The notes beneath the pieces were generated by a model, which ran no database searches, was not told the origin of the DNA, and saw nothing but the letters and a program-made list of their open reading frames with translations. This document shows, piece after piece, positions 881 to 58,249 of a stretch of DNA of 64,000 nucleotides. Numbering within the stretch: the stretch's first letter is position 1; each line of letters opens with the position of its first letter. The position numbers were made by a program, and so were the translations under genes. Source of the DNA: Octopus sinensis. Its lineage: Eukaryota. The stretch is taken from NCBI RefSeq assembly GCF_006345805.1, contig NC_043000.1, positions 122,388,001-122,452,000 on the forward strand. Reading direction: 5' to 3'.

Positions 881-3217
881 ATATAGGAAGCGAAACTCAA
901 TGCTGGATGTGTTGCATCAGAGAAAAACAAAGATGTTTGATATTAGAGACGGCCATTATATATTTAGGCTCGTCCAAAGACGAACTTACATACACTATAC
1001 ACACATACATACGTACTTATTAATATTGGTATCAATATATGGCTCTTCAAAATTAATATAGAAGTATAAGTGATTTTAAGAGGAAACTACAAATTTCGCA
1101 GTATCAAATTCATGAATCATCTTCCAAACGTTAAGAGACCCCAAGCGTTTATCTATGTACTATGTGGGTTCGTGGCAAAATTGCGTCAAACTGTATAAAA
1201 CACCTCTGAGGACACAGCGGTTTTATTGACTAAGTGATAAGTTATGAAACCAGGGCAGCACCACAGAGACGAATGTAAATTGCACCTATTGTATATCAGG
1301 TTTATAGATATGATAATGCATGAGTATATACAAAACTCGTTTTGTCTAAAAAGAAAGTCTATGTTTAAATTTTCACTTGTTTCTATCTGTAGATTGCTGG
1401 TCACACAATACATTTATTATTATATATCATATTAGTATCACGTTTGAGTTACTTCTGCTCAGTAACTTGGAGGCCAGACATTAATACCTTCGTTGGCAAA
1501 TGGTATGAGAAAAAGTTAAGTGTAATTGTTAATAACATATATATTGCCTAGCTATTGAATTATCAATAATCTGACAAATATATTGTCAGCCACAATAAAT
1601 CCTGCCACATCACTGATTCATCGTTATTTTACTTCGGATTATGCTTATCCATGCATGTTGTGGAACATCGAAAAACATCACAAATGCTTTTAATGCTTTC
1701 ACATAGACAAGTTTACCTATTCGATATATGTGATATAGTAATAAGAGTGACAGACAGACAAAACACAAAAAAATTTAGCTCGAAGGCGAAAGAGAGAATC
1801 AGAAAAATGTATTAGACCGAATAAACGAGATGGGTTTACTGTCAATTATACTAGCGTTTAAACATTTCATTGTAAATGTTGACCCGAAAAACACATCGAA
1901 TGTTAATCAGTTTTAGTTTGTTTAAACATTCAGTATGACATCACGTCTGAGTATTTACTTTTGCTGAAAAACTGGTTTTGCTAATAATAAAAAAAGAAAG
2001 TTTTTAAATGGAATGTATTTTTGGTAGCAAGTGTATAATTGTAATTTTGCGTTACCACGAACGATAAAACCAAAACGCTGGCTCTGATCTCCTGAACTGA
2101 ATAAAAATAGTTTTATCATCGACGGTACGATATATCAGGGAATACCGTTGCCTACTTTCTACAAGGTGAAGAAATGTAATGTAGAATATCAACCCTCCAA
2201 GAACATTATCAATTAAAAGCAATGGTTTCCACTGTCAAGTTTGCAGAGTAAAATTTAATATATATCACTTCAATTTTGGGTAAATCCTTATAACAGCAAG
2301 CATTAAGACAATCCACATTGTCCCTGATAGTTTGAAGTGACCATTACGTAATCCCCTACCCCTAATATTGGTGGGATATTGAATTTAGTAAACAGGTATA
2401 CCTCTGCGTCATATTGAGTATAATATGAACGGCCTTAAGTAGATTCACTGAATATCTGACAAATAGTAGTTGGAAATGGAGAAGTTGGAGTTGTCAGATA
2501 AATGGAAATAATTTACTTATCGTATTATAATGTAAGTGGGTTGTGTATTTGACAGGCACTTGTACCTTTAACATTATCTCCTATCGGAAGACGTGTGACA
2601 TTAAGATAAGACTGGTTCTTTGAGTTAGAATTACAGGTCATCTCATAGTATTCTATATAGATTCCAAACACCAAATTTCACGCACGATGCCACTTCCGAT
2701 CCGCTGTTGCGATATAAGGATTTTGTTATTTATAGAAAGGTATACTGAGATAGAACCAGGAACATTATGATTGCAAAGTGAACGTTATAACCATTCTGAC
2801 ATCCATTTTCCCAACATAGAATGAAATACAGCTAGACAAAAATATACCGTGTTATAACTAACCTTCAAGATTTCTAGAGCTAGCTAATACATTTGCTGTA
2901 TTGTATGTTCGTTTGTTTTTTGCAACTGTGAATTTTTATCTTTGCTCTTCTATGTAAATGAAGATATTTCCATCGTTTTGCTGCTTTTCTTTCTAGGAAA
3001 TGAGAAGATACATTGCAGAACTGTTATTTAACGAGCTGTGTCAATTTATCACCCGATGAGACACATCTGCACCGACGGATGCTCCTGAACCAGTTGTTAA
3101 GTATGCCACCCTGAGTGTCAATGCTAGATATATCGAAACACTTGTCGTGATTAATAATAAATTATCGCATATTCCATCTTTAGTCTTTCATTTACCATAT
3201 ATGTATATATATATATA

Positions 3218-3630
3218 GGCGCAGGAGTCATCGTGTGGTAAGTAGTTTGCTTACCAATCACATGGTTCCGGGTTCATTCCCACTGCGTGGCACCTTGGGT
3301 AAGTGTCTTCTACTATAGCTTCGGGCCGACCAAAGCCTTGTGAGTGGATTTGGTAGACGGAAACTGAAAGACGCCCGTCGCATATATGTATATATATGTA
3401 TGTTTGTGTGTGTGAGTGTATATGTTTGTGTGTCTGTGTTTGTCCCCCAACATCGCTTGACAACCGATACTGTTGTGTTTATGTCCCCGTAACTTAGTGG
3501 TTTGGCAAAAGATAACCGATAGAATAAGTACTAGGCTTACAAAGAATAAGTCCTGGGATCGATTTGCTCGACTAAAGGCGGTGCTCCAGTTTGGCCACAA
3601 TCAAATGACTTAAACAAGTAAAAGAGTAAA
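3218..3630 (+). mobile_element. tRNA-derived CORE-type SINE (family 1; probably octopus OR-type), full length
   Basis: Head ggcgcaggag..gtggtaag..ggttcattccc with A/B boxes; CORE-like ccttgggtaagtgtctt; internal TA/TG microsatellite; tail cagtcaaatgact..gtaaaagag. Many copies in the window. The family name is recalled, not searched. Confidence 0.9.
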
Positions 3631-3631
3631 T

Positions 3632-3950
<319 letters not shown>

Positions 3951-5400: not shown

Positions 5401-5650
5401 ACGTTAAATGAATTTTATGAAGCCAGTCCAGCAGAATTATGGGTGATTACTTGTAAATGCTTTTCTGCACGTAATATTTAATCTTTGTGTTTTGTTGAAA
5501 TAAATAGTAATTACGTGTTGCGTTTGGGGTCACAAGCCAAGCCTCTTGTCATTTTGGCTCTGGAATAACTCAGTGCAAAATATCACGCAAACCGAATCTA
5601 ACATACAGTTAGAAATTGTTTGCATCTTTGTATCAGTAACACATTTTGTA

Positions 5651-6056
5651 CTCTTTTACTTGTTTCAGTCATTTGACTGTGGCCATGCTGGAGCACCGCT
5701 TTTAGTCGATAAATCGATCCCAGGACTTAGTCTTTGGAAGCGTAGTACTTATTATATCGGTCTTTTTTGCCGAACCGCTAAGTTACGGGGACGTAAACAC
5801 ACCAGCATCGGTTGTCAAGCGATGTTGGGGGGACAAACACAGACACAGAAATATATACACATACATACATTCATGTATATATATACATATATACCACGGG
5901 CTTCTTTCAGTTTCCGTCTACCAAATCCACTCACAATGCTTTGGTCGGCCCGAGGCTATAGTAGAAGACACTTGCCCAAGGTGCCACGCAGTGGGACGGA
6001 ACCCGGAACCATGTGGTTTGAAAGCAAGCTTCTTACTAGACAGTCACTCCTGCGCT
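5651..6056 (-). mobile_element. CORE-type SINE family 1, full length
   Basis: Reverse complement of the 3218-3630 element; explains ORF 5546..6073. Confidence 0.9.
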
Positions 6057-6679
6057 TATATATTATTCATTGAGAAAGTACTTTAGAAGATGAGATCTTT
6101 TCCCTTTATCTTTACTTAAGACTCATTTAGGATTATATAGATAACAGCTTAGTATTAAGAATACATTATTTATAAGATATTATTAATACCACGTTGTTCC
6201 TGGAAATTAATTTAGAAAATGATAAGTATTTGATATTCGTTAGCTCGACTGAATATACGACAGATTTTTTTTGTATTCCTTCCGACCAAATACTCTGAGT
6301 TCCGTTACAAAATATGAAAGTATTGAAATTACAGTAATAGTACATGAATCTAAGGTAATGTTGTCTCTCGACGTTTCAGTTTAAAGTTAGATGAAAATAT
6401 AAAAACAGAAAATGTACTGGGATCAATTAAAGCGACTAAAATACCTCCTCAATAGTTTTATCAATGGGAATAATCAACATTATCTTAATGTCCTAATTGG
6501 TTTACGAGGACGTAAGCTACAATATATGGGTATTAAAGAGTTTCTACGATAATACAGGTCGCAATTCCTTTATTACTCAATGCATACAAAGGGCATGAGT
6601 GCACTCAATCTAGGAATCATGGTATTCTAGTAATCACTGAAACCCTGTGAAATCATAATGATAATAGTATTAGAGGAGC

Positions 6680-7090
6680 GGCGGGGTGGCAGAAGCGTTA
6701 GCACGCCGGGCGAAATACGTAGCCGTATTTCGTTTGCCGTTACGTTCTGAGTTCAAATTCAGCCGAGGTAGACTTTGCCTTTCATCATTTCGGGGTCGAT
6801 ATATTAAGTACCAGTTACGCACTGGGGTCGATATAATCGACTTAATCCGTTTGTCTGTCCTTGTTTGTCCTCTCTGTGTTTCGCCCCTTGTGGGTAGTAA
6901 AAAATAGGTATTTCGTCTGTCGCTACGTTCTGAGTTCAAATTCAGCCGAGGTCGACTTTGCCTTTCATCCTTTCGGAATCGATAAATTAAGTACCAGTTA
7001 CGCACTGGGGTCGATATAATCGACTTAATCCGTCTGTCTGTCCTTGTTTGTCTCCTCTGTGTTTAGCCCCTTGTGGGCAGTAAAGAAATA
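6680..7090 (+). mobile_element. Meta-domain-type tRNA SINE (family 3), head + two tandem body/tail-A units
   Basis: Head gcggcg..tggcagaagcgttagcac; Meta-like gcctttcatcctttcggggtcgat..agtaccag; second unit restarts at gtatttcg (6908); 14-bp TSD agtattagaggagc at 6666-6679 and 7091-7104. Confidence 0.9.
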
Positions 7091-7654
7091 AGTATTAGAG
7101 GAGCAGTAGAGTATGGGTCTGTGCATGTGTTTATGACTTTCTCCTTTATTTTCATGATGTTTAAATAACGATCGCCTGACTGAGCAACTCTGCCCGAAAG
7201 GTAAGATTGATCTCCTTGAATGCGATTTAAAATTTATTCTATGTCTGCATTATTATTTACTAATACGGAACAAATCTGCTTCCTTCTGACTGCACCACTT
7301 AAACTGTTATGACATCTTTTTCTATTTAGCTTCCATTTTAGAAATACAAATCGAATGAACACACATATTCGTTTATTCGCTCTGTACGAACATTACACAG
7401 TAGAGAAATTAGTCAAATTCAGTCTCCTGGGACATACAGTTATTCGAAAAAAAATGAACATATTAAATAGTTATTTAATTCATTGTTGAAATATTGCATC
7501 GACTGACACGATGCAAAGCCACTGTATCCAGTTTACAATGGTTGGTTTTGAAATGGAAAAACATACACTCAGTGACCTTTATAAGGACTGATGTTCTTAT
7601 GTTTTCTGCTTTTATCGAAATTCAATACATATATGAATAAATTCGATACATATT

Positions 7655-9092: not shown

Positions 9093-9500
9093 TTTCAGTC
9101 ATTTGACTGCGACCATGCTGGAGCACCGCCATTAGCCGAACAAATCGACCCCCACGACTTATTGTTTGTAAGCGTAGTACTTGTTCTATCGGTCCTGTTT
9201 TGCCGAACCGCTAAGTTACGGGGACGTAAACACACCAAAAGCTGTGTCATGCGATGGTGAGGTGACAAACACGGACACACAAATACCTATATATATGTAT
9301 ATATATATAGGTATATATATATATTTATGCACACACACAAACATATACATCTATATATACAACGGGCTTCTATCAGTCTCCGTCTAACAAATCCACTCAC
9401 AAGGCTTTGGCTGGTCCGAAGTTATATAGTAGAAGACACCTGCCCAAAGTGCCCGGAACCATGTGGTTGGGAAGCAAGTTTCTTATCACACAGCCACTCC
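9093..9500 (-). mobile_element. CORE-type SINE family 1
   Basis: Reverse-complement match to the other family-1 copies. Confidence 0.85.
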
Positions 9501-9757
9501 TTTATATATATATATATTATATATATATATAATATATATATATATATTATGTGAAATAGAAAGATGAATAATCATGTAGTAGATTAATCAAAAGTTTAAC
9601 CGATACCTTAGTAGCAAAAATCACAGCAGTAACAGCACGGTTGGAGGTACAACCATCTGGCGTTGCAACCGTGCGTTGGTGCGGATAATTGAAATTAAAA
9701 CATTATTGGTGAATTGAAGAAATGGAGCTGAACGCAGATTGAACAGAAATCGTTTTA

Positions 9758-9846
9758 TTTCATTCTACACGTGTTTCGAAAGGCACAAATTACCAAAATC
9801 CGATTGAATAATGGGACCATATTGTGTCTTTCTCTTCAGGAAGAAA
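9758..9846 (-). ncRNA. Type I hammerhead ribozyme, canonical C3:G8 core (sense to the EN ORF)
   Basis: Exact reverse complement of 11281-11369. Confidence 0.8.
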
Positions 9847-10448
9847 AAAGGAAATCCGTTGGAAAAACAAAAACAGAACAGAGGCGGAGCAAAAACAAAA
9901 ACAAATCGAACTAAGCTCCTAAGAGCCCATGGCAAAACTGTTTATCAGTGTATGTTGAGAACCGGTGGCTGAAGAATTCAACGGGTCAGGCATCGGTCAA
10001 TCATGTGGGTGAGGGTGTATAGATGTTCTTTGTGACCGAGAATAAAGTTCTGACTATTTAAGGAATATTGGATGTTTTATAAGGGGCGAGAAAAAATCTA
10101 CTTAGAGACGTGTGTGTGTGTATACTGTTCTATATATGTGTGTGTTGGCGTAGGGGTAGAAAACATTTTTTGTGTACATGTGTGCGTTTGATCGTTCGGC
10201 TGTCAGTGGCTACTGCCGTGATAACCGTTGGGTGGCAGAAAGAAAAAAAAAAAATATATATATATTATGTTTTATGTGTGTGTGTTCATCTAAGCCTGCC
10301 TTGTCAAGGAAACCCCCCGCTGTGAAAAAACCAAGCCCCGTTTGTCTTACAGGAGTAATTCCCCTTGCAGTGGTTAATCGTAGATATCTTAAAGGCTATT
10401 TCAGAATTTGTTACCAAGGGCTATGGGTGCCGGTATTATTTATAAACG

Positions 10449-11090
10449 CTATTTAAAAGCCAGATAAGTGTAACGCCGCCAATGGGGGCATCGAAAAGCC
10501 GACTGTAAGAGCCCGTTTACCATCCGGCCTCTGGCAAACAAAATATGGAAGAGTTCGGAGACACAAAGGTTGCACTGTCTTCTGCCCCTATCAAATGGGA
10601 GGGCCACCGACAAAATTGACCATTCCAGCCTATAGCTTAAGTTCGTATCCTTCAGTCGCCATATTAGCTTACTGAGTCCCGTGGTCTGGCGCTTGTTCAT
10701 GTCCCGAAAAGTTGCGTAATGGTTGGAGACACGCAAAGACAATCTTGAGGATGATGCCCCTACATAAGTGAAGACATCTGAGTCCGTGTAAACCTTGCAT
10801 TGGTAGACGGCGTTTTTGATCTTGGAGTTCGCCGACGTGAATCTTAATCTGCTAGGATTAGTTTCTGAAATTAGAACTGCGTTCCTGTCACTATATTCGT
10901 TCCGAGACCTGCAGCCGCTTACTACTCTATTTTCCACTACGTCACTATTAACTATAGGAATAACCGCTGATTCTCCACTATCTATCAGAGTGCTGTCATT
11001 GCTACTGCCCGTGGTGCTGCTATTGCGGGAAATGATGCTGGGGATGCTATTGGGGCTCTCTACCCTACTCCCATTGTTACCGTCAACCAC
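10449..11090 (-). CDS. PLE-type GIY-YIG endonuclease domain preceded by an S/N/G-rich linker (probably the truncated C-terminus of an RT-EN polyprotein)
   Basis: AVYQCKV..YVG, then RVSNH, T.LSKLIW.LKD, WSIL...PF, CNLC..E, N, CPH: the motif order typical of invertebrate PLE endonucleases. Confidence 0.8.
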   Translation of the reverse strand: MVDGNNGSRVESPNSIPSIISRNSSTTGSSNDSTLIDSGESAVIPIVNSDVVENRVVSGCRSRNEYSDRNAVLISETNPSRLRFTSANSKIKNAVYQCKVYTDSDVFTYVGASSSRLSLRVSNHYATFRDMNKRQTTGLSKLIWRLKDTNLSYRLEWSILSVALPFDRGRRQCNLCVSELFHILFARGRMVNGLLQSAFRCPHWRRYTYLAFK

Positions 11091-11280
11091 AACACCCCTA
11101 TTATAACTATACCCCTAGTGGGTACTCCTGGCTGGAGGTGAGATTATGTGTCACTGTACTGGCTCTCATATCATTATTACTACTATAATTATTCCTACTG
11201 AGCATTAAACCGGGAGCGGAAGAGGCTGTGCCTCCGGAAAAATGTGATAGGGTCTTAGTAAGTAGCCTATTATTTCCTTT

Positions 11281-18170: not shown

Positions 18171-18338
18171 GGCACCAAGGTGCAGTTGTGACTGTGTGGT
18201 AAGTAGATTGCTTAACAACCACATGGTTCCGCGTTCAATCCAACTGTGTGGCACCTTGGGCAAGTGTCTTCTACTATAGCCTCGGGCTGACCCAAGCTTT
18301 GTGAGTGGATTTGATACTGATACTGAAAGAAGCCCGTC

Positions 18339-18392
<54 letters not shown>

Positions 18393-18600
18393 ATGTGTTT
18401 GTTTCTCTGTATGCGTTTGTCTCCCCAACATCGCTTGACAACTGATGTTGGTGTGTTTACGTCCCCGTAACTTAGCGGTTCGGCAAAGGGGGCCAATAGA
18501 ATAAGAACTAGGCTTACAACGAATAAGTCTTGGGGTCGATTTCCTCGACTAAAGGCGGTGTGTCCAGCATGGTCGCAGTCAAATGACTTAAACAAAATAA
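18171..18600 (+). mobile_element. CORE-type SINE family 1
   Basis: Match to the other family-1 copies. Confidence 0.85.
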
Positions 18601-18704
18601 TAAAAGAATATACGATGCGGATTATAAAAGTAAGAATACAAATAATAGTTGGAGAACAAATTAGGATAACGATGATTAAATAAACAAAAGTATGTATATA
18701 ATCT

Positions 18705-19099
18705 TTTCTGCTCTAGGCACAAGGCCGGAAATTTTGCGGAGTGGGGGTGCCAAGCGATTAGACTGATCCAATACGCAATTGGTGTGTAATTTATCGACTC
18801 CGAATGATGAAAAGCAAAGTCGACCTCGGCGGAATTTGAACTCAGAACGTAGCGGTAGACGAAATACCTATTTCCTTACTACCCACAAAGGGCTAAACAC
18901 AGAGAGGACAAGCAAGGACAGGCAAATGGATTAAGTCGATTATATCGATCCCAGTGCGTAACAGGTACTTATTTAATCGACCCCGAAAGTATGAAGGGCA
19001 AATCGACCTCGGCGTTTTTGAACTCAGAACGTGGCAGCAGACGAAATACGGCTACGCATTTCGCCCGGCGTGCTAACGTTTCTGCCAGCTCACCGCCTT
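18705..19099 (-). mobile_element. Meta-type SINE heterodimer: head + tail-A unit + tail-B unit
   Basis: Junction gacgaaatac|ctatttcc at 18867/18868; the distal unit ends in tail B (ccttgtgcctagag on minus). Confidence 0.85.
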
Positions 19100-19894
19100 A
19101 AAAAAGATATATATAAAATATAAGTACTCGGTAGTCTCCACTCAGTTCACTAAATTGCCTAGTGACTACTTTGAATTCAATAACACAGTGCACACACTAC
19201 AATTTTCTTCCGAGCATAACGTGTGCAGACCAGTGGATGTGTATGATGGTAGCAACGAAACCTTTCAGATGGAGCATTATAGAAAGCATAATGCTCTTCA
19301 AGGTTTCGTAATCCTTCTAAGGAATAAAATATTTAAACAAAATACTATAGTTACATTGCAAGAACATGTGCAAAAAAAATAGTTTTCTGGATAAAATCAT
19401 TAATACAAAGAAGATTTTATACTGAGAGACAAGTAAAATGGATTATGAAACTTCAAGGCCCCATAGGATTTCATTTTATAAGTTCTTGCCTCTATTAGTA
19501 ATTCCGATAAAAAATTAACATGGAGGTTTCCAGTCTACGCAAATATCTCAGAAGCAGCATATGCTTGGCTTGAAAGAACTATATATGAAAATATATTGTG
19601 TGTAATACACATCTGCGCAAGATTAGCTTCTTTTTAATTAAAATTATCTACTTTTCTTCTACATTCTTTCTGAAATATGATACGAAACATTTGCAATAAA
19701 CCCTTTTGGGAATGGAATTCAACATTAAAGTGACTAACGCAACGACTATTCTTATATAAGCATTGCTCATTTCTGTAAGTAGAACCGTACACGGCACCAA
19801 ACATTCAGTGAGTCTATACTGTACGTTATCAACATGCAGGCGAATGACGCACAACTTACTTGCACACTCATCAGACGATGATTTTTTATAACAG

Positions 19895-20125
19895 AGTCGG
19901 TGAGCTGGCGGAAACGGTAGCACGCCGAGTGAAATGCGTAGCCGTATTTCGTCTTCCGCTATGTTCCGCGTTCAAATTCCTCCGAAGTATACTTTGTCTT
20001 TCATACTTTCGGAGTCGATTAATTAAGTACCAGTTACGCACTGGTGTTGATGTAATCGACTGAATCCGTTTGTCTGTCCTTGTTCGTCCCCTCTGTCTTT
20101 AGCCCCTTGTGGGTAGTAAAGAATT
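19895..20125 (+). mobile_element. Meta-type SINE monomer, tail A
   Basis: Match to family 3. Confidence 0.85.
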
Positions 20126-20424: not shown

Positions 20425-20650
20425 TTTACTAACCACAAGGGGCTAAACACAGGGAGGGCAAACAAGGACAGACAAACGAATTAAGTCGATTTTATCGACC
20501 CCAGTGCGTAACTGGTACTTAATTCATCGATCCCGAAAGGATGAACGGCAAAGTCAGCTTCGGCGGAATTTGAACGCAGAACGTAACGGCAGACGAAATA
20601 CGGCTACGCATTTCGCTCGGCGTCCTAAAGTTTCTGCCAGCTCGTCGCCT
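20425..20650 (-). mobile_element. Meta-type SINE monomer, tail A, with TSD
   Basis: 19-bp direct repeat ttgttacccaacaatatat at 20399-20417 and 20652-20670. Confidence 0.9.
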
Positions 20651-23530: not shown

Positions 23531-23943
23531 GGTGATAGGAGTGGCTGTGTGGTAAGTAGCTTGCTTACCAACCACATGGTTACGAGTTCATTTCTACTGC
23601 GTGGCACCTCAGGCAAGTGTCTTCTACTATAGCCTCGGGCTGACCAAAGCCTTGTGAGTGGATTTGGTAGACAGAAACTGTAAGAAGCCCGTCGTATATA
23701 TGTATATACGTATATATGTATGCATGTGTATGTTTGTGCATCTGTATTTGTACCCCCAACATCGCTTGACAACCGCTGGTGGTGTGTTTACTTCCCCGTA
23801 ACTTAGCGGTTTGGCAATATAAAGCGATAGAATAAGTACTAGGCTTACAAAAAATAAGTCCTGGGGTCGATTTTTTTAACTAAAGTCGATGCTCCTGCAT
23901 GGCCTCAGTCAAGTGACTGAAACAAGTAAAGAGAAAGAGAGAG
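23531..23943 (+). mobile_element. CORE-type SINE family 1
   Basis: Match to the other family-1 copies. Confidence 0.85.
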
Positions 23944-26390: not shown

Positions 26391-26413
26391 GCATATAAGG
26401 GAGCTCGAAATAG

Positions 26414-26827
26414 GCGGCGAGCTGGCAGAAATGTTAACGCGCCGGGCGAAATGCTTAGCGGTATTTCGTCTACCGTTACGTTCTGAGTTCAAATTCCGCC
26501 GAGGTCGACTTTACCGTTCATCCTTTCAGGGTCGATGAATTAAGTTCCAGTTACGCACTGGGGGTCGATGTAATCGACATAATACCTTTGTCTGTCCTTG
26601 TTTGTCCCCTCTGTGTTTAGCCCCTTGTGGGTAGGAAAGAAATAAGTATTTCGTCTGTCGTTACGTTCTGAGTTCAAATTCCGCCGGGGTCGACTTCGCA
26701 TTTCATCCTTTCGGGGTCGATAGATAAAGTACCAGTTATGCACTGGAGTTGATGTAATCGACTTAATCCGTTTGTCTGTCCTTGTTTGTCCACTCTATGT
26801 TTAGCCCCTTGTGGGCAATAAAGAAAA
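26414..26827 (+). mobile_element. Meta-type SINE homodimer (head + 2 tail-A units)
   Basis: Units start at gtatttcg 26461 and 26646; 16-bp TSD atataagggagctcga at 26393-26408 and 26828-26843. Confidence 0.9.
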
Positions 26828-27400
26828 ATATAAGGGAGCTCGATGATCACATGGTTATAAACAATGAACAAGCCGTACAAATTCAAATTTGCATGGACCC
26901 ACTGACTTAAAGAGTCTCCAATCTAGAGCAAGTATCTTTTTTAATGACTTCAGATCGGCTTAAAATTTGTGAGTGAAATTGGATGGAAACACCCGATGTA
27001 TCTATCGTACCTCTCAAATTAAGCATTGCCACATTCTGTGTCACGTTCATACTGCTACAGGAGATTACTGAAAGGATAACTCAATGCAGCTCTCATCTAA
27101 ATGCATTGTAGTTTCGGAACATGTATCTAAATTCATCAAACTACTTGAATACTCACTGTCAAAATTAAAGAAGGTCAATGTAATTAAGGTTTTATTTCTG
27201 AAACAGAAATATACAAAAACTCTTATTTAAACGGTTTACCATCGTTGATTTTCGTTTGTCAGTATCAAAGTGCTACGACAAAGTATATACCTAAAGTACT
27301 TTTGCAATGGGCAACTTGCTTTGGTCTTAAGAACTTTGTTGGCTAATGGAAACCATGAATTCATAATGAGAGGTGAATTCTTACTTTTCCGTTTTATTCC

Positions 27401-31553: not shown

Positions 31554-31622
<69 letters not shown>

Positions 31623-31854
31623 AAAATAAAGATAAAATCTTTATAAGAAATTATCAGTAGTTAGCGTGAAAAACCTCGTAAGAGAAAAAATCTGTAAATT
31701 TTCCACTTTGAAAATGTTTATTTATATTATATAGAGAGTACTATTATTCAGAGGTACCGCACGCTAGGAGGGACTTTTGCAGTCAAAACTACTAAAATAA
31801 ACAAATTGTACCGAAAGGAAAACTTCAAAGCAAGTCATTTAAAAACAGAATTTG

Positions 31855-31918
31855 GTTACATATCACCTGTGATTTCGCAATCAATGCAGAATATGCATTC
31901 TATGCTCTTCAGTGCAAC
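31855..31918 (-). ncRNA. Type I hammerhead ribozyme, canonical core
   Basis: Reverse complement of 32340-32403. Confidence 0.85.
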
Positions 31919-32339
31919 GAACTCAAGACATATAAGATGTTTTGCTTTCGGTACAATTTGTTTATTTTAGTAGTTTTGACTGCAAAGGTCACTCCTAGCG
32001 TGCGGTACCTATGAATAATAGTACTCTCTATATAATATAAATAAATATTTTCAAAGTGGAAAAATTTACAGATTTTTTCTCTTACGAGGTTTTTCACGCT
32101 AACTACTGATAATTTCTTATAAAGATTTTATCCTTATTTTCAAATTGATATTTTTCACCGGAATAGTTCAATACTGAATTTTTGTGCCGAGTAGGCAAGT
32201 TTGTTACCGAAATGCATTGCGAATAAGCCCGCCATTTTCATAGATATGTAAAGATAAACATCCGTACATGATGCGGCGAATTCTACGGTTGGCTGTCGGG
32301 TATGTAATGGTGTTTTTTTTTCTTATATGTCTTGAGTTC

Positions 32340-34143: not shown

Positions 34144-35067
34144 TTGTGTAACCCACCGTTTGAGCAACTTCCTCGACATATTACTCAAATATTTACGTTT
34201 TTAAAATATGTGAAAAGCTTTATCAGGGATGACCTAGATATGCTGAACCACCTCCCGAAGACAGTAAAGGAAGGAACTCTGCTGGTATCTTTCGATGTGG
34301 TGAATCTATACACCAATATCCCACACGACTATGGTATAGAATCAATCACAATCTGGCTAGAAAAATACCCAGAAGAGATCCCTGGACGCATTAACCACAG
34401 TTTTATAATTGAAGCACTCAAATTCATCCTGCTGAACAATTATTTCATGTCCGATACAACTTACTATCGACAAAAATGTGGAATTGCAATGGGAACCAGA
34501 GCTGCTCCAGTGATTGCAAACCTTGTAATAGGTTACCTAGAACTCAGGTTATACCAATCATCACTAGAAAAATATGGCGCCTCTTTTAATTGCTATTTAA
34601 AGGGGAACTGGCAGAGATATTTGGATGATTGCTTCATACTTTGGAAAGACAGCATGGATAAACTCCTTGATTTCAAAATAATGCTTAACAACATACATAG
34701 CAATATACAATTCACTATGGAACACAACAGTAAACAACTAGACATCTTAATTAAAATAGTTAACAACCACATAAAAACAGATATCTTTTATAAACCCACA
34801 GATTCTAAACGATACCTATTATTTAACTCTTGCCACCCCAAACACAGAAAAATTAATATACCCTTTAATCTAGCGAAAAGAATCTGTATCATAGTTTCGG
34901 ATACATATACTTGTGAACAAAGATTCCTTGAACTTAGATCAACACTAACTAAAAGACATTACCCAATCTCATTAATAAATGAAGGCATTAAAAGAGCTAA
35001 GGAAATAGATATACAAATGTTAAGGCAAACCAGACTTAAAAATACTCCCGTACATTTCCACACATAA
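34144..35067 (+). pseudogene. PLE reverse transcriptase core and thumb (fragment)
   Basis: RT motifs as above; frame broken at both ends. Confidence 0.85.
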
Positions 35068-39679: not shown

Positions 39680-40102
39680 AAGGGGGTGAACTGGCAGAAA
39701 CGTTAGCACGCAGGGCGAAATGTTTAGCGGTATTTCGTCTGTCTTTGCGTCCTGAGTTCAAATTCCGCCGAGGTAGACTTTGCCTTTCATCCTTTCGGGT
39801 CAATTAAATAAGTACCAGTTACACATTGGGGTCGATATGATCGACTTAATCCGTTTGTCTGTCCTTGTTTGTCTTCACTCTGTGTAGCCCCTTGCGGGCA
39901 ATAAAGAAAGAGAAAGAAAGAGGTAACATGCTTAGCGACATTTCGTCCACCTATACGTTCTGAGTTCAAATTCTTCCAAGGTCCAGCAGCTTATCCTCCT
40001 TTTGTGGGGTCCATGAAATAAGTAACATTTGAGCACTGGGATCGATATTATAAGCATCCATCCTGCATCGAAATTGCTAGCACTGTGACAAAATTTGAAA
40101 GC
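39680..40102 (+). mobile_element. Meta-type SINE heterodimer (tail-A unit + decayed older unit)
   Basis: Older unit resumes at atgcttagcg (~39928), slightly upstream of the usual junction, and ends in an aaatttgaaagcaat-type tail. Confidence 0.75.
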
Positions 40103-40185
40103 AATATGTTTTCTGTATAATGAAATTTGCTTCTTAGCTCTTGTTATATCAATCATTACAAAATATTGAATCAATATATATATAT

Positions 40186-40574
40186 TTCTCTACTACCCAC
40201 AAGGGGCTACACACAGAGAGGACGACAAACGGATTAAGTCAATTACATCGACCCCAGTGCGAAACTGGTACTTTATTTATCGACCCCGAAAGGATGAAAG
40301 GCAAAGTCGACCTCGGCATATTTTGAACTCAGTACGTAACGACAGACGAAATACCTATTTCTTTGCTACCAACAAGGGGACAAACAAGGACAGACCAAGG
40401 GATAAAGTCGATTACATCGACCCCAAATTCGTAACAGGTAATTAGTTTATCGAACCCGAAAGGATAAAAGGCAAAGTCGACCTCGGCGAAATTTGAACTC
40501 ACAACGTAACGGCAGACGAAATACGGCTAAGCTTTTCGCCCGGCGTGCTAACAATTCTGCCAGCTCGCCGCCTC
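40186..40574 (-). mobile_element. Meta-type SINE homodimer
   Basis: Junction 40354/40355; 17-bp TSD aatattgaatcaatata at 40162-40178 and 40575-40591. Confidence 0.9.
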
Positions 40575-41588
40575 AATATTGAATCAATATAACCTCTAGA
40601 TTTTGCTTTTCTGAATATATTTCGTTTTTATCTGAAATATATATTTGATAACAGTTTGTATACGATATTCCTTAGTTTATAATTGAAATACTACCTATAT
40701 TTGCACTACCTCTGTACACAGGAGAAAGCATAAATCAATGTCATAATACTATTTGTGGGTATTCACTGCATTATATTATGCCTCTATTTATATGAATCTG
40801 CATTGTAGCCCTATGAAAAGAACGCTGTTTCATAAACTTAAAGAAGTCAGTTCATCTGACATAGAACCTTAGCGCCTAATATATCATTCTTTTGAGTTCA
40901 ACTTTAGGGAATTAAATCCAGTCATTCATATCACTAGTTCTATAAGATTCGAATTTTTGCAAAGCATTAAATATTTAAGAATAAGCGTTGCCGGCGAATT
41001 TGTTAAGATGAAGCTGAGCACCCTTAAATGTAAAGTTGAGATAACTCATCACGTGTTGTTATCCTCCTTGCAGTGCTTGAATGGAAGAGAATAAGAGAAG
41101 AGGAGCTTTTCAATGGGATGCAGAATTGCACCAACCATTATTTGACTTCTACTCATGCAGTCACAAGGATGTATTATCTAATCATACCTTAACTATGTTA
41201 CAAACTAAACTGCATATGAATGATCTTAGTGTGAGCATATGCACCAAATTTAGGTTGCTCTAACGAAAGAATGCGTTTTTAAAAAATTCATTTTAAAGAT
41301 TAGTTGGAGATTATATATATATATATATCAATTTATTCTTTTTTATTCTTATATCGTTGCAGTAATTTGACTGTGGCCATACAGGGGTACTGCATTTAGT
41401 CGAACAAATCGATACCAGGACTTACTGTTTGTAAGCCTTGTATTTATTATATAGGTCGTTTTTGTCGAACCACTATGTTATGGGGACGTAAACACACCAA
41501 CGTCAGTTGTCAAGCAATGGTGGGGGACAAACACAGACACACATACATATATATATATATGTGTCATATATATATTTTTTTATATAAT

Positions 41589-45290: not shown

Positions 45291-45694
45291 TTATTCTTTT
45301 TTCTTTTAATTGTTTCAGCCAATTGACTGCGGCCATGCTGGAGCACCGCCTCTAGTCGAGCAAGTCGACTTTAGGACTCATTCTTTGTAAGCCTAGTATT
45401 ATACTATGGGTTTCTGAATTTGTAAAACCACAGAGGAAAACACTTGGCAGCTTTTCGTCCATTCCTACGTTCTGAGTTCAAATTTCACTGAGGTCGAATT
45501 TACCTTTCATCTTTCGGGGTCGATCAAACAAGTACCAGTTGACTACTGTAGTCGATGTAATCGACTAGTCCCTTCGCCGAACTCGATGTCATTGTACCAA
45601 TTTGAAAGCATTAGTTCTTATATACAACAAGTTCTCATATATAATATAGTTGTTAAGAAAACCGTTCTGCAGTTACTGGCACACACGCGGATAT

Positions 45695-46762: not shown

Positions 46763-47175
46763 AAGAGGTGAACTGGCAGAATCATTAACATCACCAGGCA
46801 AAATGCTTAACGGTATTTCGTCTGCGGTTACGTTATGAGTTCAAATTCCGCCGAGGTCGACTTTGCCTTTCATCCTTTCGGGATCGATTAAATAAGTACC
46901 AGTTACACACTTGGGTCGATATAATCAACTTAATCCGTTTGTCAGTCCTTGTTTGTCCTTTCTGTGCTTAGGCCCTTCTGGGTAGTAAAGAAATAGAAAT
47001 AGGTATTTCCTTCACCTTTGTGCGTTGAGACTACATTCTGCCGAATGTCGACTTTGCCTTTCATCCCTTCATCATTTCGCGGTTTATAAAGTAAGTACCA
47101 TTTAAATACTGCGATCGATGTAATCGACTTGCCCCTCCCCCAAAATTGCTGGCCTTATGCAAAAATTTGAAATCA
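46763..47175 (+). mobile_element. Meta-type SINE chimera: diverged head + young tail-A unit + diverged tail-B unit
   Basis: Units start at gtatttc 46813 and 47003; head and distal unit deviate from the consensus more than the middle unit. Confidence 0.8.
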
Positions 47176-47402
47176 GTATAATAAATCGGTAAGGTGGCGA
47201 GCTGGCAGAATCGTTAGCAACGCCAGCCAAAATGCTAAGCGGCATTTCCTTCGTCTTTACGTTCTGAGTTCAAATTCTGCCAAAGTTGATTTCGTAATAC
47301 CTCCAGCAAAGTCAGATAATCACCGATATAAATGAGTGTGTTTGTGCGTGTGAGTGTGTGTGCGTGTGCGTTTCTGTGCATGTATGTACATATGCGTGTA
47401 TG

Positions 47403-49522: not shown

Positions 49523-50193
49523 ATATATATGTTTGTGTGTGTGTGTATTTACATATGGACAAGGTTACAGAAAGTTTAAAAGTTACACATACAAACTATA
49601 ACATTGACTAAAAAGCAAAACAAAAAATGCAAACAGATTTTATTTGGAATCAATGGCCTATCAAGACAGCGACTGGGTCTTAAGAATTTTTGCTGTATAA
49701 AATTCACGAATAAATTACAGAGAATGCCTTGAGGCTGTGAAAGTGAGGCCAGTTTTCATTTCATAGCTTTTATGATAAATGTCTTGCCGTGTGGTGATGG
49801 TGGTGTATTTTGGTCGTGGTGGTGTAGTTCGTGGTGGCGGTGTATTTTGAAGTGGTGGAGCATTTTTGTGGAATTGGCGTATTTTGGTTGTATTTCATCC
49901 TTCGTTTCTTTTTGTTGTTCTATTGTTTGTTATGTTTTGGTTGGTTCCATCTTGTTGTCTCCTGTTTACGAAAAGAATCACGTTGTCTGCAGAGTCCTTA
50001 ACTAAAAAGCCAGAGTTAAAAGAATGGAATCCGTGACTAATGGTCTTTTATAGTTTGACAGACCGTGTGATTGGAGTTTTGCGAAAAAAAAAGAGAGAGA
50101 GAAATAAAAGAAAGCGTAAAAAAGAATGAAACAAGGAATCAAAATAAGACGATGTAGAAATATTAGCTTGAGAAAGAAAATGAGGGTGGAAGA

Positions 50194-50194
50194 C

Positions 50195-50267
<73 letters not shown>

Positions 50268-50592
50268 GTGATGGTGATGATGATGATGATGATGGTGATG
50301 ACGACGACGATGACGACAATAATAAGAATAATAATTGGGAGAAGAAGAAGAAGAAGAAGAAGAAGAAGAAGAAGAAGAAGAAGAAGAAGAAGAAGAAGAA
50401 GAAGAAGAAGAAGAAGAAGAAGAAGAAGAAGAAGAAGAAGAAGAAGAAGAGAAGAAAAGAAGAAGAAGAAGAAGAGAAGAAAAGAAGAAGAAGAAAGAAG
50501 AAGAAGAAGAAAAGAGAAGAAGAAGAAGAAGAAGAAGAAGAAGAAGAAGAAGAAGAAGAAGAAGAAGAAGAAGAAGAAGAAGGAGAAGGAGG
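50194..50592. repeat. Compound (GAT)n-(GAC)-(AAT)-(GAA)n trinucleotide tract
   Basis: Direct; explains the poly-D/K/E/R ORFs. Confidence 0.95.
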
Positions 50593-55610: not shown

Positions 55611-55780
55611 TGTGTTTGTGCGTGTGTGTATGAGTGTGTATGTACAAAATTCATAATTTATATATAATTTATATTTGTTGGAGTATTTTGTCCATCTTCA
55701 TCTCCCTAACACACTTTTACATAGTTATACGAAACCTAGTCTCACATTACCAATGTCTGCGTCGATTTCCTTATCAATAG

Positions 55781-55944: not shown

Positions 55945-56027
<83 letters not shown>

Positions 56028-56244: not shown

Positions 56245-56510
56245 AATATAAAAAGTGTGGTAAATTTGCCAAAAAATGCCAAGATAAGAGGATAATCATT
56301 TTGCACCATTACAGCAATCCTTAATGTTTGTAGCGAATATAGCAATCAGATCAGTTCGTTTCCAATTGCTGTCAGGTGTCCCTTTCTTGAATGTACATAT
56401 TGTTCCAGTTTGTTTCATTCCAGGAGGCATTATTTGTAAAAGAATATATAGTAATAGTACTGCATTTGCCTACTAAACCAGCATAGGGATGTAAATATCT
56501 CTTAAATATA

Positions 56511-57113
56511 TTTCTTTATTGCCAGCAGGGGGCTAAACATAGAGGGGACAAACAAAGACAGACAAAAGGATTAAGTCGATTACATCGGCCCCTGTCCGTA
56601 ACTGGTTCTTATTTAATCGACCCTGAAAGGATGAAAGGCAAAGTAAACCTCGGCAGAATTTGAACTCAGAACGTAACGGCTGACGAAATACCTATTTCTA
56701 TTTCTTTACTATCCACAAGAGGCTAAACACAGAGAGGACAAACAAGGACAGACAAACGGATTAAATCGAATATATCAACCCCAGTGCGTAACTGGTACTT
56801 ATTTATTCGGCCCCAAAAAGATGAAAGACAAAGTCGACCACGGCAGAATTTGAACTCAGAACGTAGCGGCAGAGGAAATACCTCTTTCTTTACTACCCAC
56901 AAGGGGCTAAACACAGAGGGGACGAACAAAGACAGACAAACGGATTATGTCGATTATATCGACCCCAGTGCGTAACTGGTACTTATTTAATCAACCCCGA
57001 ATGGATGAAAGGCAAAGTCGAGCTCGGCGGAATTTGAACTCAGAACGTAACGGCAGACCAATTACGGCAACGCATTTTGCCCTGCATGCTAACGTTTCTG
57101 CCAGCTCACCGCC
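56511..57113 (-). mobile_element. Meta-type SINE trimer (head + 3 tail-A units)
   Basis: Junctions at 56691/56692 and 56881/56882. Confidence 0.88.
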
Positions 57114-57137
57114 TTAAAAGTCTCTGAATTAAATATT

Positions 57138-57322
57138 CTTTTCTACTCTATGTACAAGGCTCGAAATTTTGGGGGAAGGAGCCAGTCGATTACATCGACC
57201 CTAGTATGCAAAGATGAAAGACAAAGTCGGCCTTGGTGGAATTTCAACTCAGGACGTAAAGACAGACTAATTACTACTAAGCATTTCCCCTGGCGTACTA
57301 ATATTACTGCCAGCTAGCCGCC
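57138..57322 (-). mobile_element. Meta-type SINE, older tail-B monomer
   Basis: Diverged body (aaagacagactaattac) and tail B. Confidence 0.75.
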
Positions 57323-57346
57323 TTAACAGTCACTAAATTAGATATT

Positions 57347-57689
57347 AGATCGACCCCAGTATGCAACTTGTGCTTAATTTATCGAACTCAAAAATATGAA
57401 AGGCAGAGTCGACCTTGGTGGAATTTGAACTCAGGATATAAAGACAGACGAATTACCTGTTTCTTTACTACCCACAAGGGGCTAAACACAGAGAGGACAA
57501 ACAAGGACTGATAAACGGATTATGTCGATTATATCGACCTCAGTGCGTAACTGGTACTTATTTAATCGATCCCGAAAGGATGAAAAGCAAAGTCGACCTC
57601 AGCAGAATTTGAACTCAGAATGTAGCGGCAGACGAATTTCCCGCTAAGCATTTCCCCTGGCGTGCTAACATTTCTGCCAGTTCGCCGCC
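57347..57689 (-). mobile_element. Meta-type SINE chimera: old head + tail-A unit + old body
   Basis: Junction 57456/57457; the head (catttcccctggcg) and distal body (aaagacagacgaattac) match the old monomer at 57138-57322. Confidence 0.8.
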
Positions 57690-58249
57690 TTAACAGTCTC
57701 TAAATTAAATATTAACAAGATGTGCTCGTATCGCAGGAAAAAATAACACATTTATACAACGAACATGATAAGAAATGAAAAGAAGCGAGATGGCATAATG
57801 TTGTAAACAGAGAAATGTACACATTTTACAAAATGGCTCTAACTCCTAACGAGGTTAGACACACAATAACGCAACAAGAACGGAAATACAAATAGAGACA
57901 CAGCAATGGACGATAGTCAAGAAACAGCAAAATGTAAGCCGTCCAGGCAGTATAGGGACATATTTATTATTAATATCAATTGACATTAAGTATTACTAAA
58001 TAATGGTACATCAGTCGGTACGCATACAATTACCTGCACAAATATTAATTCATCTAATTATTAGTGAAGTCGTCCAGAAGCTGACGTGTCTCCCACACAT
58101 ATATGTAAACACATACTAACATGATTTTGTGTGTGTGTGTAAAGGAGCACAAAAAGAGTATTGCACATGAATACGTGGATATAAACGTGCAAGTGTTTGC
58201 ATACATCAGTAAATATATATATACATACACACACAGATGTAAGGATATA

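What the first reader, a model, noticed from the sequence alone, without database searches (positions are those of the whole stretch)
6666..7104. Meta-type SINE multimerises at one fixed nucleotide: self-targeting or rolling-template retroposition
Seen: eight independent junctions (6908, 18868, 26646, 40355, 47003, 56692, 56882, 57457) join the tail end (..aaagaaatag) to the same internal position (gtatttc, between the A and B boxes). Each array has only one head. Three dimers are bracketed by single TSDs of 14, 16 and 17 bp. The two units at 6680 share a private variant (attcagccg). Inference: either the template RNA is multimeric/circular and is copied processively, or new copies insert into relatives at this site with a homology-guided 5' join. 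Random tandem duplication would not give the same breakpoint each time. I know of no description of this behaviour but cannot search.
Basis: partly seen in the sequence, partly recalled or inferred. Interest (0 to 1): 0.7.

Follow-up and report, generated by a model that had tools for sequence, protein, structure and literature searches.

The report
Octopus SINE nests inside related SINEs
In this octopus genome window, new copies of a short retroposon have repeatedly landed at one exact nucleotide inside the head of older related copies and been stitched in register, building head-less tandem arrays; this is an unusual but explainable variant of ordinary SINE insertion.

Summary
A ~230-bp octopus SINE ("X") forms seven arrays in the window. 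In them, eight junctions join a complete tail (..GTAAAGAAATA) to GGTATTTCG, the 3' arm of a hairpin between the A and B boxes. The TSDs of 14, 16 and 17 bp are confirmed.

A new X copy is reverse-transcribed into an older SINE at this nucleotide, and its 5' end is resolved by homology. The result is [old head][new body+tail][old body].

Evidence:
- Array heads have lost more CpGs than the body of the first unit (29/48 kept vs 66/80, p=0.007). Monomers show no such difference.
- A paralogous copy at 57321-57135 has the same flank, head and Y-type body but lacks the X unit.
- Junction position follows the upstream unit's tail subfamily: alpha 9/9 at this site, beta 3/3 at other sites (p=0.0045).
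- Ordinary TSDs begin with the same motifs, RGTATT for alpha and AGAAT for beta.
- Mixed arrays always have X lying 5' of Y.

Rolling or circular templates and unequal crossover are not supported. Template jumping and dimeric source genes are not excluded for arrays A, C and D. The sample is only about 0.37 Mb, so a genome-wide and orthologous-site check is still needed.

The parts
6666..6679 (+). 5' target-site duplication of array A (AGTATTAGAGGAGC)
   Evidence: Exact repeat at 7091-7104.
6680..6907 (+). Array A, unit 1: head (A-box-like TGGCAGAA), hairpin, B-box-like GAGTTCAAATTC, body, and complete alpha tail GGGTAGTAAAAAATAG
6711..6732 (+). Head hairpin CGAAATAC-GTAGCC-GTATTTCG. The recurrent junction falls at the loop / 3'-arm boundary, 6724|6725.
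   Evidence: The consensus fold gives a 12-bp stem with a 6-nt loop. Sequence read.
6908..7090 (+). Array A, unit 2. It lacks head positions 1-45, starts at GTATTTCG, and has tail GGGCAGTAAAGAAATA.
   Evidence: blastn query 46-227, 92.35% identical to unit 1.
7091..7104 (+). 3' TSD of array A
18686..19115 (-). Array B: TSD 19115-19101; X unit 19096-18868; junction 18868|18867; head-less Y-type unit 18867-18701 with a Y tail; TSD 18700-18686
26393..26843 (+). Array C: TSD 26393-26408; X unit 26414-26645 (head of gcTTAGCGG type, alpha tail); junction 26645|26646; X unit 26646-26827 (beta tail); TSD 26828-26843
40162..40591 (-). Array D: TSD 40591-40575; X unit 40571-40355; junction 40355|40354; X unit 40354-40179; TSD 40178-40162
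46764..47186 (+). Array E: CpG-depleted, Y-like head plus young X body 46764-47002; junction 47002|47003; old Y-type unit 47003-47186
   Evidence: CpGs kept: head 0/6 vs body 8/10, p=0.007. Sequence.
56509..57134 (-). Array F (trimer): 22-nt flank 57134-57113; F1 57112-56882; F2 56881-56692; F3 56691-56509
   Evidence: Non-CpG divergence rises 5'->3': 5.4%, 7.4%, 9.5%. CpGs kept: head 2/6 vs F1 body 9/10.
57344..57710 (-). Array G (filled site): flank 57710-57689; old head plus X body 57688-57457; junction 57457|57456; Y-type unit 57456-57344
57135..57343 (-). G' (unfilled paralogue of G): the same 22-nt flank 57343-57322, the same head variant CCAGGGG, and an uninterrupted Y body and tail
   Evidence: G2 vs G' body is 88.2% identical; G1 vs G' is 74.1%.
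39682..40100 (+). Beta-tail X unit (39682-39922) abutting a Y-type unit that starts at head position ~33 (39923 onward). This is a junction at a different head position.
19896..20124 (+). X monomer M1 (control), TSD TTTATAACA
20425..20649 (-). X monomer M2 (control), TSD ATATATTGTTGGGTAACAA
48210..48410 (+). X monomer M4 (control), 5'-truncated at about position 17

Best explanation
This is self-targeted nested retroposition with an in-register 5' join.

The element is a ~230-bp tRNA-like SINE ('X') of octopuses. Its RNA is reverse-transcribed by a partner LINE directly at a nick in the chromosome (target-primed reverse transcription, TPRT).

Shown:
- The nick site is not random. Ordinary X insertions have TSDs that begin with RGTATT (alpha-tail subfamily) or AGAAT (beta-tail subfamily).
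- The head of every X and Y SINE carries such motifs. GGTATTTCG lies at the loop / 3'-arm boundary of a hairpin between the A and B boxes. AGAAACG lies at position 15.

Inferred:
- When the bottom strand of an older SINE is nicked there, the new cDNA is laid down with its complete tail abutting old position 46.
- The short stretch that would become the TSD (old positions 46 to ~53-58) is homologous to the new cDNA. The upstream DNA end therefore anneals in register, and the new head is discarded.
- The product is [old head][new body + tail][old body + tail] inside the old element's TSDs. It has one head, a constant junction and a complete internal tail.
- Repeating the event at the head-proximal site gives trimers that are youngest at the 5' end.
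- Some extra factor raises use of this site about 60-fold over other RGTATT sites. That factor is not identified. Candidates are the homology itself, the hairpin, or an RNA 3' end that extends into GGUAUUU.
For: 1. Chimeric age. Array heads keep 29/48 consensus CpGs, whereas the first-unit bodies keep 66/80 (p=0.007). For E the counts are 0/6 vs 8/10 (p=0.007) and for F 2/6 vs 9/10 (p=0.036). Monomers show no difference, 36/46 vs 57/79 (p=0.53). A's head is also more diverged at non-CpG sites than A1's body, 6/35 vs 4/147 (p=0.004).
2. Unfilled paralogous site. G' (57321-57135) has the same 22-nt flank, head variant and Y body as G but no X unit. G2 vs G' is 88% identical; G1 vs G' is 74%. G1 positions 46-53 carry the old element's AATT variant.
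3. Junction position follows the upstream unit's subfamily. Alpha tails are 9/9 at 45|46. Beta tails are 3/3 at 14|15 (L039 and L045, two species) or at ~33 (Fisher p=0.0045).
4. Ordinary TSDs start with the same motifs: AGTATTAGAGGAGC, GGTATAGTCGATTA and AGTATTACACTGTGT. The probability that at least 3 of 14 start with RGTAT is 3.5e-6. Beta monomers have AGAATTGC.. and AGAATGGA...
5. All six mixed arrays have X lying 5' of Y.
6. Internal tails are complete, as at any TPRT 3' junction. E1 and F2 have two GAAATA repeats.
7. In F, divergence rises 5'->3'.
8. No stand-alone unit starting at position 46 was found among 26 X 3' ends and about 15 fragments.
Against: 1. The sample is small: 64 kb plus ~300 kb, with 9 + 3 junctions.
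2. Arrays A-D show no CpG age difference between head and body (21/24 vs 34/40).
3. A1 and A2 share a private variant at about position 86, well outside the expected TSD zone. Simple insertion in trans does not predict this.
4. The duplicated zone inferred for E, G and L039 is only about 8-13 nt or less, shorter than ordinary TSDs (13-19 nt).
5. No 'two-head' full-length nested copy was seen. In-register resolution would therefore have to be very efficient.
6. G' could in principle be a deletion derivative of G, through a crossover within the first ~12 nt of the units.
7. The RGTATT motif alone does not explain the ~60-fold excess at SINE heads.
8. The nicked primer end is not complementary to the tail ..GAAAUA.
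9. The last units of A, C and D share TGTCG (3 of 4 vs 1 of 12 monomers). This could instead mark a dimeric lineage.
Confidence: 0.55

Rival explanations
1. Template jumping during one retroposition event. The reverse transcriptase copies a SINE RNA from its tail up to position 46. It stops there because the RNA is cleaved in the anticodon-like loop (like a tRNA 3' half) or carries a blocking base modification. It then jumps to the 3' end of another X RNA and copies that to its 5' end.
For: - A single TSD brackets whole arrays, and internal tails are complete.
- The junction lies exactly at the loop / 3'-arm boundary of a strong hairpin in the tRNA-like head.
- Arrays A-D show no age difference between head and bodies.
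- From my own knowledge: R2 and L1 reverse transcriptases jump end-to-end between templates in vitro, and template switching is the accepted source of composite SINEs (also cited in PMC4758252 and PMC4824008).
Against: - It does not predict heads older than the adjacent body (E, F, pooled p=0.007).
- It does not predict the unfilled paralogue G'.
- It predicts that junction position depends on the downstream (donor) unit. Instead the position tracks the upstream unit's tail subfamily (p=0.0045).
- It predicts both X-Y and Y-X orders, but 6/6 mixed arrays are X 5' of Y.
- It predicts stand-alone units starting at position 46, and none was seen.
Confidence: 0.15
2. Multimeric source genes. A dimer arose once or a few times, by any mechanism. 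It is transcribed by Pol III from its single head through both units and retroposes as a dimer, as Alu does. Trimers arise later by unequal exchange.
For: - Whole arrays A, C and D have clean single TSDs and intact, CpG-rich heads.
- The X consensus has no run of four or more T, so read-through is plausible.
- The last units of A, C and D share TGTCG, and A, C and F share GGGCA, whereas junction-forming units are always TGCCG and GGGTAG.
- The junction sequence is nearly constant: AGGTATTTCG in 7 of 8.
- A1 and A2 share a private variant.
Against: - Four of eight window junctions, plus L039, join X to different and mutually divergent Y-type units. Each would need its own master.
- Head and first body differ in age in E and F.
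- G' lacks the X unit.
- Unit 1s and unit 2s of A, C and D do not form separate clusters in pairwise distances.
- TGTCG is also the Y-family state, so it may simply mark older targets.
Confidence: 0.15
3. Post-insertion DNA-level tandem duplication. Unequal crossing-over or replication slippage occurs between the tail (GAAATAG) and the similar head segment (GAAATGCTTAG).
For: - The tail resembles the 5' arm of the head hairpin.
- The 56.5-57.7 kb cluster does show DNA-level duplication of [22-nt flank + SINE].
- This mechanism is proposed for clam and squamate SINE arrays (PMC11481361, PMC10702118).
Against: - An exchange within the shared GAAAT or TAG would retain the loop nucleotides (..TAGCCGTATTTCG). 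These are absent at all eight junctions, and the tail is complete.
- Units of one array are not nearest neighbours (0.129 vs 0.130, permutation p=0.46).
- Units often belong to different families.
Confidence: 0.05
4. Rolling or circular RNA template copied processively.
For: The repeat unit is constant. A1 and A2 share a private variant and are 92% identical.
Against: - A circle of positions 46-229 cannot supply the single full head.
- Units within arrays differ in subfamily or family and in age.
- Mixed X-Y arrays cannot come from one circle.
Confidence: 0.03

Closest known systems
Head-to-tail SINE multimers in mammals: B2 (40% of copies), Dip (49%), Ves (11.5%) (PMC8466645; also cited in PMC10702118)
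   Same: A large fraction of copies sit in same-orientation tandem arrays. The candidate causes are the same: integration of one SINE into another, or multimeric templates. Target choice appears to be driven by resemblance to what the TPRT machinery prefers.
   Different: In those cases the units are full-length, each with its own head, and the junction is in the A-rich tail. Here the target is inside the head, the downstream unit loses 45 nt (or 14, or ~33), and the join is in register, so only one head remains.
TSD1-(SINE)n-TSD1 arrays of HCD SINEs in the blood clam Scapharca broughtonii (PMC11481361)
   Same: A mollusc tRNA-derived SINE. One complete head at the 5' end, internal units with the same head truncation, and one TSD pair around the whole array.
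   Different: In the clam, the first and internal units also have truncated tails, and the authors invoke unequal recombination. Here every internal tail is complete, units are not nearest neighbours, and the head, first body and last unit differ in age.
Microhomology-mediated 5' attachment / 5' truncation of L1 and Alu insertions, and preferential insertion of Alu into A-rich parts of older Alus (from my own knowledge, not checked in the library)
   Same: The 5' end of the new cDNA is joined where it can pair with the upstream target end. Nested insertion occurs at sites that match the endonuclease or priming preference.
   Different: Here the homology is the target element itself. The truncation point is therefore fixed, and the product mimics a tandem duplication.
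Site-specific non-LTR elements that target repeats or other transposons, such as R2 in 28S rDNA and Tx1L in Tx1D (from my own knowledge)
   Same: Repeated use of one nucleotide position in a repeated target.
   Different: X is not site-specific. About half or more of its copies lie in unique DNA with varied TSDs. It is a non-autonomous SINE, and its target is its own family.
Dimeric SINEs that amplify as dimers (Alu; shrew-mole dimer, PMC13023118)
   Same: Two related units under one Pol III promoter, bracketed by one TSD.
   Different: Those have fixed, position-specific unit differences and a single origin. Here the partners vary (X-X, X-Y, trimers) and have different ages.

Membership tests
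tRNA-derived SINE (non-autonomous, LINE-mobilised retroposon) | Internal Pol III promoter (A and B boxes) in a tRNA-related 5' head | tested here: inconclusive
   A-box-like TGGCAGAA and B-box-like GAGTTCAAATTC are present at the expected spacing. ARAGORN finds no tRNA and Rfam finds no tRNA match. The tRNA origin therefore rests on box motifs only.
tRNA-derived SINE (non-autonomous, LINE-mobilised retroposon) | Short, non-coding, dispersed copies flanked by variable target-site duplications, with a 3' end of short repeats | tested here: met
   More than 25 copies in three genomes' loci. TSDs of 9-19 bp differ at each locus. The tail is ..GTAAAGAAATA with a variable number of GAAATA/GAAAGA repeats.
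tRNA-derived SINE (non-autonomous, LINE-mobilised retroposon) | 3' tail shared with a partner LINE | not tested
   No LINE with this tail was found in the window. Only a Penelope-like RT is present. X and Y tails resemble each other (CCTTGTG..AGTA..AAAG).
MetaSINE superfamily (Nishihara et al. 2016, PMC4824008) | 66-bp Meta-domain immediately after the tRNA-derived region (61-86% identity to the consensus) | not testable with these tools
The consensus appears only in a figure, and no supplementary text is held.
Head-to-tail multimers by insertion into the tail of another SINE (B2/Dip type) | Each unit is full-length with its own head, and the junction lies in the tail repeat | tested here: not met
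   Downstream units lack 45 nt of head (or 14, or ~33), and the upstream tail is complete. Family Y in L035 does show the classical form.
SINE-derived tandem repeat / satellite formed by unequal recombination | Units within an array are each other's closest relatives, and junctions fall within shared homology | tested here: not met
   Within-array distance is 0.129 vs 0.130 overall (p=0.46). The loop nucleotides expected from a homologous exchange are missing.
Dimeric SINE amplified from a dimeric master (Alu-like) | Position-specific diagnostic differences shared by all copies, and both units of a copy the same age | tested here: inconclusive
   Two columns (TGTCG and GGGCA in last units) are position-biased. 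However, partners vary, four downstream units are Y-type, and the head is older than the first body in E and F.
Site-specific non-LTR retroposition | Essentially all copies occupy the same target sequence | tested here: not met
   14 of 26 X 3' ends abut unrelated DNA with varied TSDs. This is a strong preference, not specificity.

The most novel reading that the evidence does not exclude
X-alpha may be a 'homing' SINE. A unit that sits upstream of a head-less unit would be transcribed a few bases into the junction, ending ...GAAAUAGGUAUUU. TATTT is a weak Pol III terminator in other SINEs (PMC8466645). That 3' extension would pair with the nicked GGTATTTCG site of any other SINE head. It would guide TPRT there and recreate the same arrangement. 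The result would be a self-propagating cycle in which both ends of the insertion are homology-guided. The cycle would seed satellite-like arrays and would explain the ~60-fold excess over other RGTATT sites.
Probability: 0.15. Interest if true: 0.75.

Novelty: new variant of a known kind. Interest (0 to 1): 0.5.

Why it matters
If confirmed genome-wide, this would be a clean natural case in three respects:
- A SINE's own sequence is a preferred integration target.
- The 5' end of a TPRT product is resolved by long homology rather than microhomology.
- Retroposition, not recombination, lays down the first repeats of a tandem array. How interspersed repeats turn into satellites is still an open question.

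It also has a practical consequence. Such arrays look like simple tandem duplications or dimeric subfamilies to repeat annotators, although they are really nested insertions of different ages. That distorts SINE copy counts, age landscapes and presence/absence phylogenetic markers in cephalopod genomes, where I recall SINEs being reported at about 8% of the genome (from memory, not checked).

Tried and rejected
- **Public collections.** I searched for more copies with a conserved 16-mer in viral contigs and a 20-mer in metagenome contigs. Only chance hits or nothing came back.
- **Protein search with the dimer's open frame.** The reverse-strand frame of the dimer is open, so I used it as a protein query. 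It returned two proteins, both from monomers.
- **Extra octopus DNA.** I obtained about 300 kb indirectly, from loci of Penelope-like RT proteins. All 12 look-ups are used. No orthologue of the window could be fetched.
- **tRNA detection.** ARAGORN and Rfam do not recognise the head as a tRNA.
- **Nearest-neighbour test.** Within-array distances do not differ from between-array distances. This has low power because the family is star-like. It argues only against recent local duplication.
- **Possible tail-derived filler before heads.** I considered that AATAG or GAG in front of the heads of C and D might be tail-derived filler. I rejected this because nearly all heads are preceded by (T/A)AAG, which is probably a transcribed leader.
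- **Microhomology priming.** I considered pairing between the tail GAAAUA and the hairpin arms. The registers predict junctions that keep the loop or that invert the element. Neither is seen at 45|46. Only the ~33 junction at 39922 fits.
- **Chance match.** A GTATTTCG-like match at 9005 was checked and is not a SINE.
- **Rolling-circle template and unequal crossover.** Both were rejected as the origin of the junction (see rivals).
Full report
**What the window is.**
The window is AT-rich (about 36% G+C) and dense in repeats. A 307-aa reverse-transcriptase ORF at 34144-35067 finds its best named relatives in Octopus sinensis and O. bimaculoides. A 1.6-kb repeat at 9696-11274 is 98.4% identical to O. 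sinensis DNA (L039). The window is therefore octopod, most likely from the O. sinensis/vulgaris lineage.

**The element.**
- The element ('X') is about 230 bp long. A consensus was built from 15 full copies.
- It begins GGCGGCGAGCTGGCAGAAACGTTAGC and is usually preceded by a short (T/A)AAG leader.
- It carries a B-box-like GAGTTCAAATTC and ends ..CCCCTTGTGGGTAGTAAAGAAATA.
- Between the two boxes lies a hairpin, CGGGCGAAATGC-TTAGCC-GTATTTCGTCTG (12-bp stem in RNA).
- ARAGORN and Rfam do not call the head a tRNA.
- A sister family, 'Y', shares the head and core. It has a different 3' half..GGCCTTGTGCCTAAAGTAGAAAAG or ..TTTGAAATCA.

**Checking the observation.**
- blastn of 6680-6908 against the window gives 27 hits. 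Every non-first unit of an array starts at query position 46.
In 7 of 8 the tail ..GAAATA is followed by GGTATTTCG. In array C it is GAAATAAGTATTTCG.
- This point is the boundary between the hairpin loop and its 3' arm.
- The TSDs of 14, 16 and 17 bp around A, C and D are exact. B has an imperfect 15-bp TSD.
- Each window array has one head. The variant attcagccg is private to A1 and A2.

Qualifications:
- F, G and a third SINE (G') form a cluster in which each is preceded by the same 22-nt sequence. The events are therefore six to eight, not certainly eight.
- Half of the downstream units are Y-type (B2, E2, G2).
- Other junction positions exist. X tails abut head position ~33 at 39922|39923. 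They also abut head position 14|15, with the identical junction GAAATA|AGAAACGTTAGC, in O. sinensis L039 and O. bimaculoides L045.

**More data.**
- Pattern scans of the viral and metagenome collections found no copies.
- I fetched about 300 kb of O. sinensis, O. bimaculoides and Argonauta DNA around Penelope-like RT genes.
- These loci hold about ten X monomers and two arrays. Argonauta has none.
- The window is therefore unusually rich in arrays: 7 arrays vs 3-4 monomers, against 1 vs 9 elsewhere as counted (Fisher p=0.02). A second outside array (L045) was found afterwards.

**Which mechanism?**
Four models make different predictions.

*(a) Unequal crossover between the tail and the similar GAAATGCTTAG of the head.*
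- This would keep the loop bases (..TAGCCGTATTTCG) and need not keep a full tail.
- All junctions lack those bases and have complete tails, some with two GAAATA repeats.
- Units of one array are not nearest neighbours (mean p-distance 0.129 within vs 0.130 overall, permutation p=0.46).
- I reject this as the origin of the junction. DNA-level duplication did shape the 56.5-57.7 kb cluster.

*(b) A rolling or circular template.*
- It cannot supply the single head.
- It predicts identical units. Instead, units differ in subfamily, family and age.

*(c) A template jump from a 5' end at position 46, or (d) dimeric masters.*
- Both predict that the head and the first body are one molecule and therefore the same age.

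*(e) Nested TPRT into an older SINE at 45|46, with the upstream end annealing in register.*
- This predicts a chimera: [old head][new body + tail][old body].

**Tests that separate these models.**
1. *CpG decay.* In monomers, head and body keep consensus CpGs equally (36/46 vs 57/79, p=0.53). In arrays the head keeps 29/48 and the first body 66/80 (p=0.007). The difference is driven by E (0/6 vs 8/10, p=0.007), F (2/6 vs 9/10, p=0.036), G and L039. A-D show no difference. A's head is, however, more diverged at non-CpG sites than A1's body (6/35 vs 4/147, p=0.004). In trimer F, non-CpG divergence rises 5.4%, 7.4%, 9.5% from 5' to 3'.
2. *A paralogous empty site.* G' (57321-57135) shares with G the 22-nt flank, the head variant CCAGGGG and the Y body. 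G2 vs G' is 88% identical; G1 vs G' is 74%. G' has no X unit. G1 positions 46-53 carry the old element's AATT variant, as expected for a duplicated target. A deletion derivative would need a crossover in the first ~12 nt of a >110-nt homology, which is possible but less likely.
3. *Junction position follows the upstream unit.* All nine units whose tail abuts position 46 have the alpha tail (GGGTAGTAAAG). All three that abut position 15 or ~33 have the beta tail (GGGCAATAAAG). Fisher p=0.0045. In a jump model the stop point belongs to the downstream template. In a nesting model the inserting (upstream) element chooses the site.
4. *Ordinary insertions show the same preferences.* Three of 14 TSDs begin with RGTAT: AGTATTAGAGGAGC, GGTATAGTCGATTA and AGTATTACACTGTGT. 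The motif frequency is 0.002 per position, so P=3.5e-6. Two of these bound alpha monomers; the third is the outer TSD of array A, whose terminal unit has the intermediate GGGCAG tail. Two beta monomers have AGAATTGC.. and AGAATGGA... The head sites GC|GGTATTTCG and GGC|AGAAACG match these motifs.
5. *Order in mixed arrays.* All six have X lying 5' of Y (binomial 0.016).
6. *No free position-46 units.* No stand-alone unit starting at position 46 was found.

**Conclusion on mechanism.**
I give it about 0.55.

The steps shown are the chimeric ages, the site motifs, the subfamily rule and the unfilled paralogue. The steps inferred are the bottom-strand nick at 45|46, the in-register annealing of the upstream end, and the loss of the new head as a flap.

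Points not explained:
- SINE-head RGTATT sites make up about 5% of such sites (about 20 of 411 in 306 kb). They nevertheless received 9 of 12 RGTATT-class insertions, roughly a 60-fold excess.
- The duplicated zone seems short, about 8-13 nt or less.
- No two-head nested copy was seen.
- A1 and A2 share a variant outside that zone.
- The last units of A, C and D share TGTCG. This fits 'older, Y-like targets' but also fits a dimeric lineage.

Template jumping (0.15) and dimeric masters (0.15, perhaps as a secondary route for A, C and D) therefore remain open.

**Comparison with what is known.**
- Head-to-tail multimers make up 40-49% of B2 and Dip copies. Their origin (insertion into tails vs dimeric templates) is unsettled (PMC8466645). 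Those units are full-length.
- Blood-clam HCD SINEs form TSD1-(SINE)n-TSD1 arrays with one full head. There the internal tails are truncated, and the arrays are attributed to unequal recombination (PMC11481361).
- Squamate SINE-derived satellites are likewise attributed to recombination or repeated insertion (PMC10702118).
- I found no description of in-register, complete-tail nesting at a fixed head nucleotide with subfamily-specific sites.
- I rate this a new variant of a known kind (nested, target-preferring SINE insertion with homology-assisted 5' joining). It is not a new category.
- MetaSINE membership could not be tested.

**Verdict.**
The pattern is clean, unusual and immediately testable genome-wide. 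However, the evidence rests on a dozen junctions, and the frequency outside this window is clearly lower.

Noticed in passing
window 34144-35067 (+), 10449-11090 (-), 9696-11274: Penelope-like retroelement pieces are present. One is an RT ORF whose best named hits are Octopus proteins carrying RVT_1, DUF8422 and HTH_animal domains. Another is an ORF that looks like a GIY-YIG nuclease, judged by eye only; the Pfam GIY-YIG calls are on database relatives of the RT ORF. Region 9696-11274 is 98.4% identical to O. sinensis L039 42160-40589, which suggests a recently active element and places the window in that lineage.
   Followed up: partly
window 3197-3640, 5646-6063, 9093-9501, 18178-18612, 23537-23941, 55777-56250, 59072-59469: A different repeat of about 420 bp is very abundant. 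There are seven copies in the window and many in every O. sinensis and O. bimaculoides locus fetched, at 70-89% identity. Its family was not identified.
   Followed up: no
L035 8650-9600 (-), O. sinensis: Four Y-family SINEs lie head-to-tail, each with its own head, separated by short ATT-rich spacers. This is the classical tail-targeted kind of multimer and contrasts with the head-less X arrays.
   Followed up: partly
window 56509-57710 (-): Three SINE arrays (G, G', F) are each preceded by the same 22 nt, AT(T/C)TAATT(T/C)AG(A/T)GACT(G/T)TTAAG. A degenerate copy follows F3. G2 is cut at GATCTAAT and joined to the next copy of this sequence. This points either to TSD-mediated tandem duplication or to repeated use of one target site. 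The order of events was not resolved.
   Followed up: partly
window 63507-63383 (-) and 45440-45566 (+): Two Y-type copies have internal deletions within the head: GCTGG|TTTAGCAGTATTTCG and TTGGCAG|CTTTTCGTCC. In both, the deletion removes the segment between the A box and the hairpin's 3' arm.
   Followed up: no
window 50000-50640: A long low-complexity purine/pyrimidine tract, about 600 bp, gives spurious poly-Ser, poly-Lys, poly-Glu and poly-Phe ORFs on both strands.
   Followed up: no
window 31612-32151; 61388-61724 vs 61832-62197: There is a 540-bp self-complementary (palindromic) segment at 85% identity. There is also an inverted repeat pair of about 340-365 bp (85%) separated by ~100 bp. 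Both may be foldback or MITE-like elements.
   Followed up: no
window 6673-7062 (-): The reverse strand of dimer A is one open frame of 130 codons with no stop. The head-less unit is 183 bp, or 61 codons, so the frame is kept across units. O. bimaculoides has an annotated 'uncharacterized protein' (P0103) that contains a translated SINE monomer. Such ORFs are annotation traps.
   Followed up: partly
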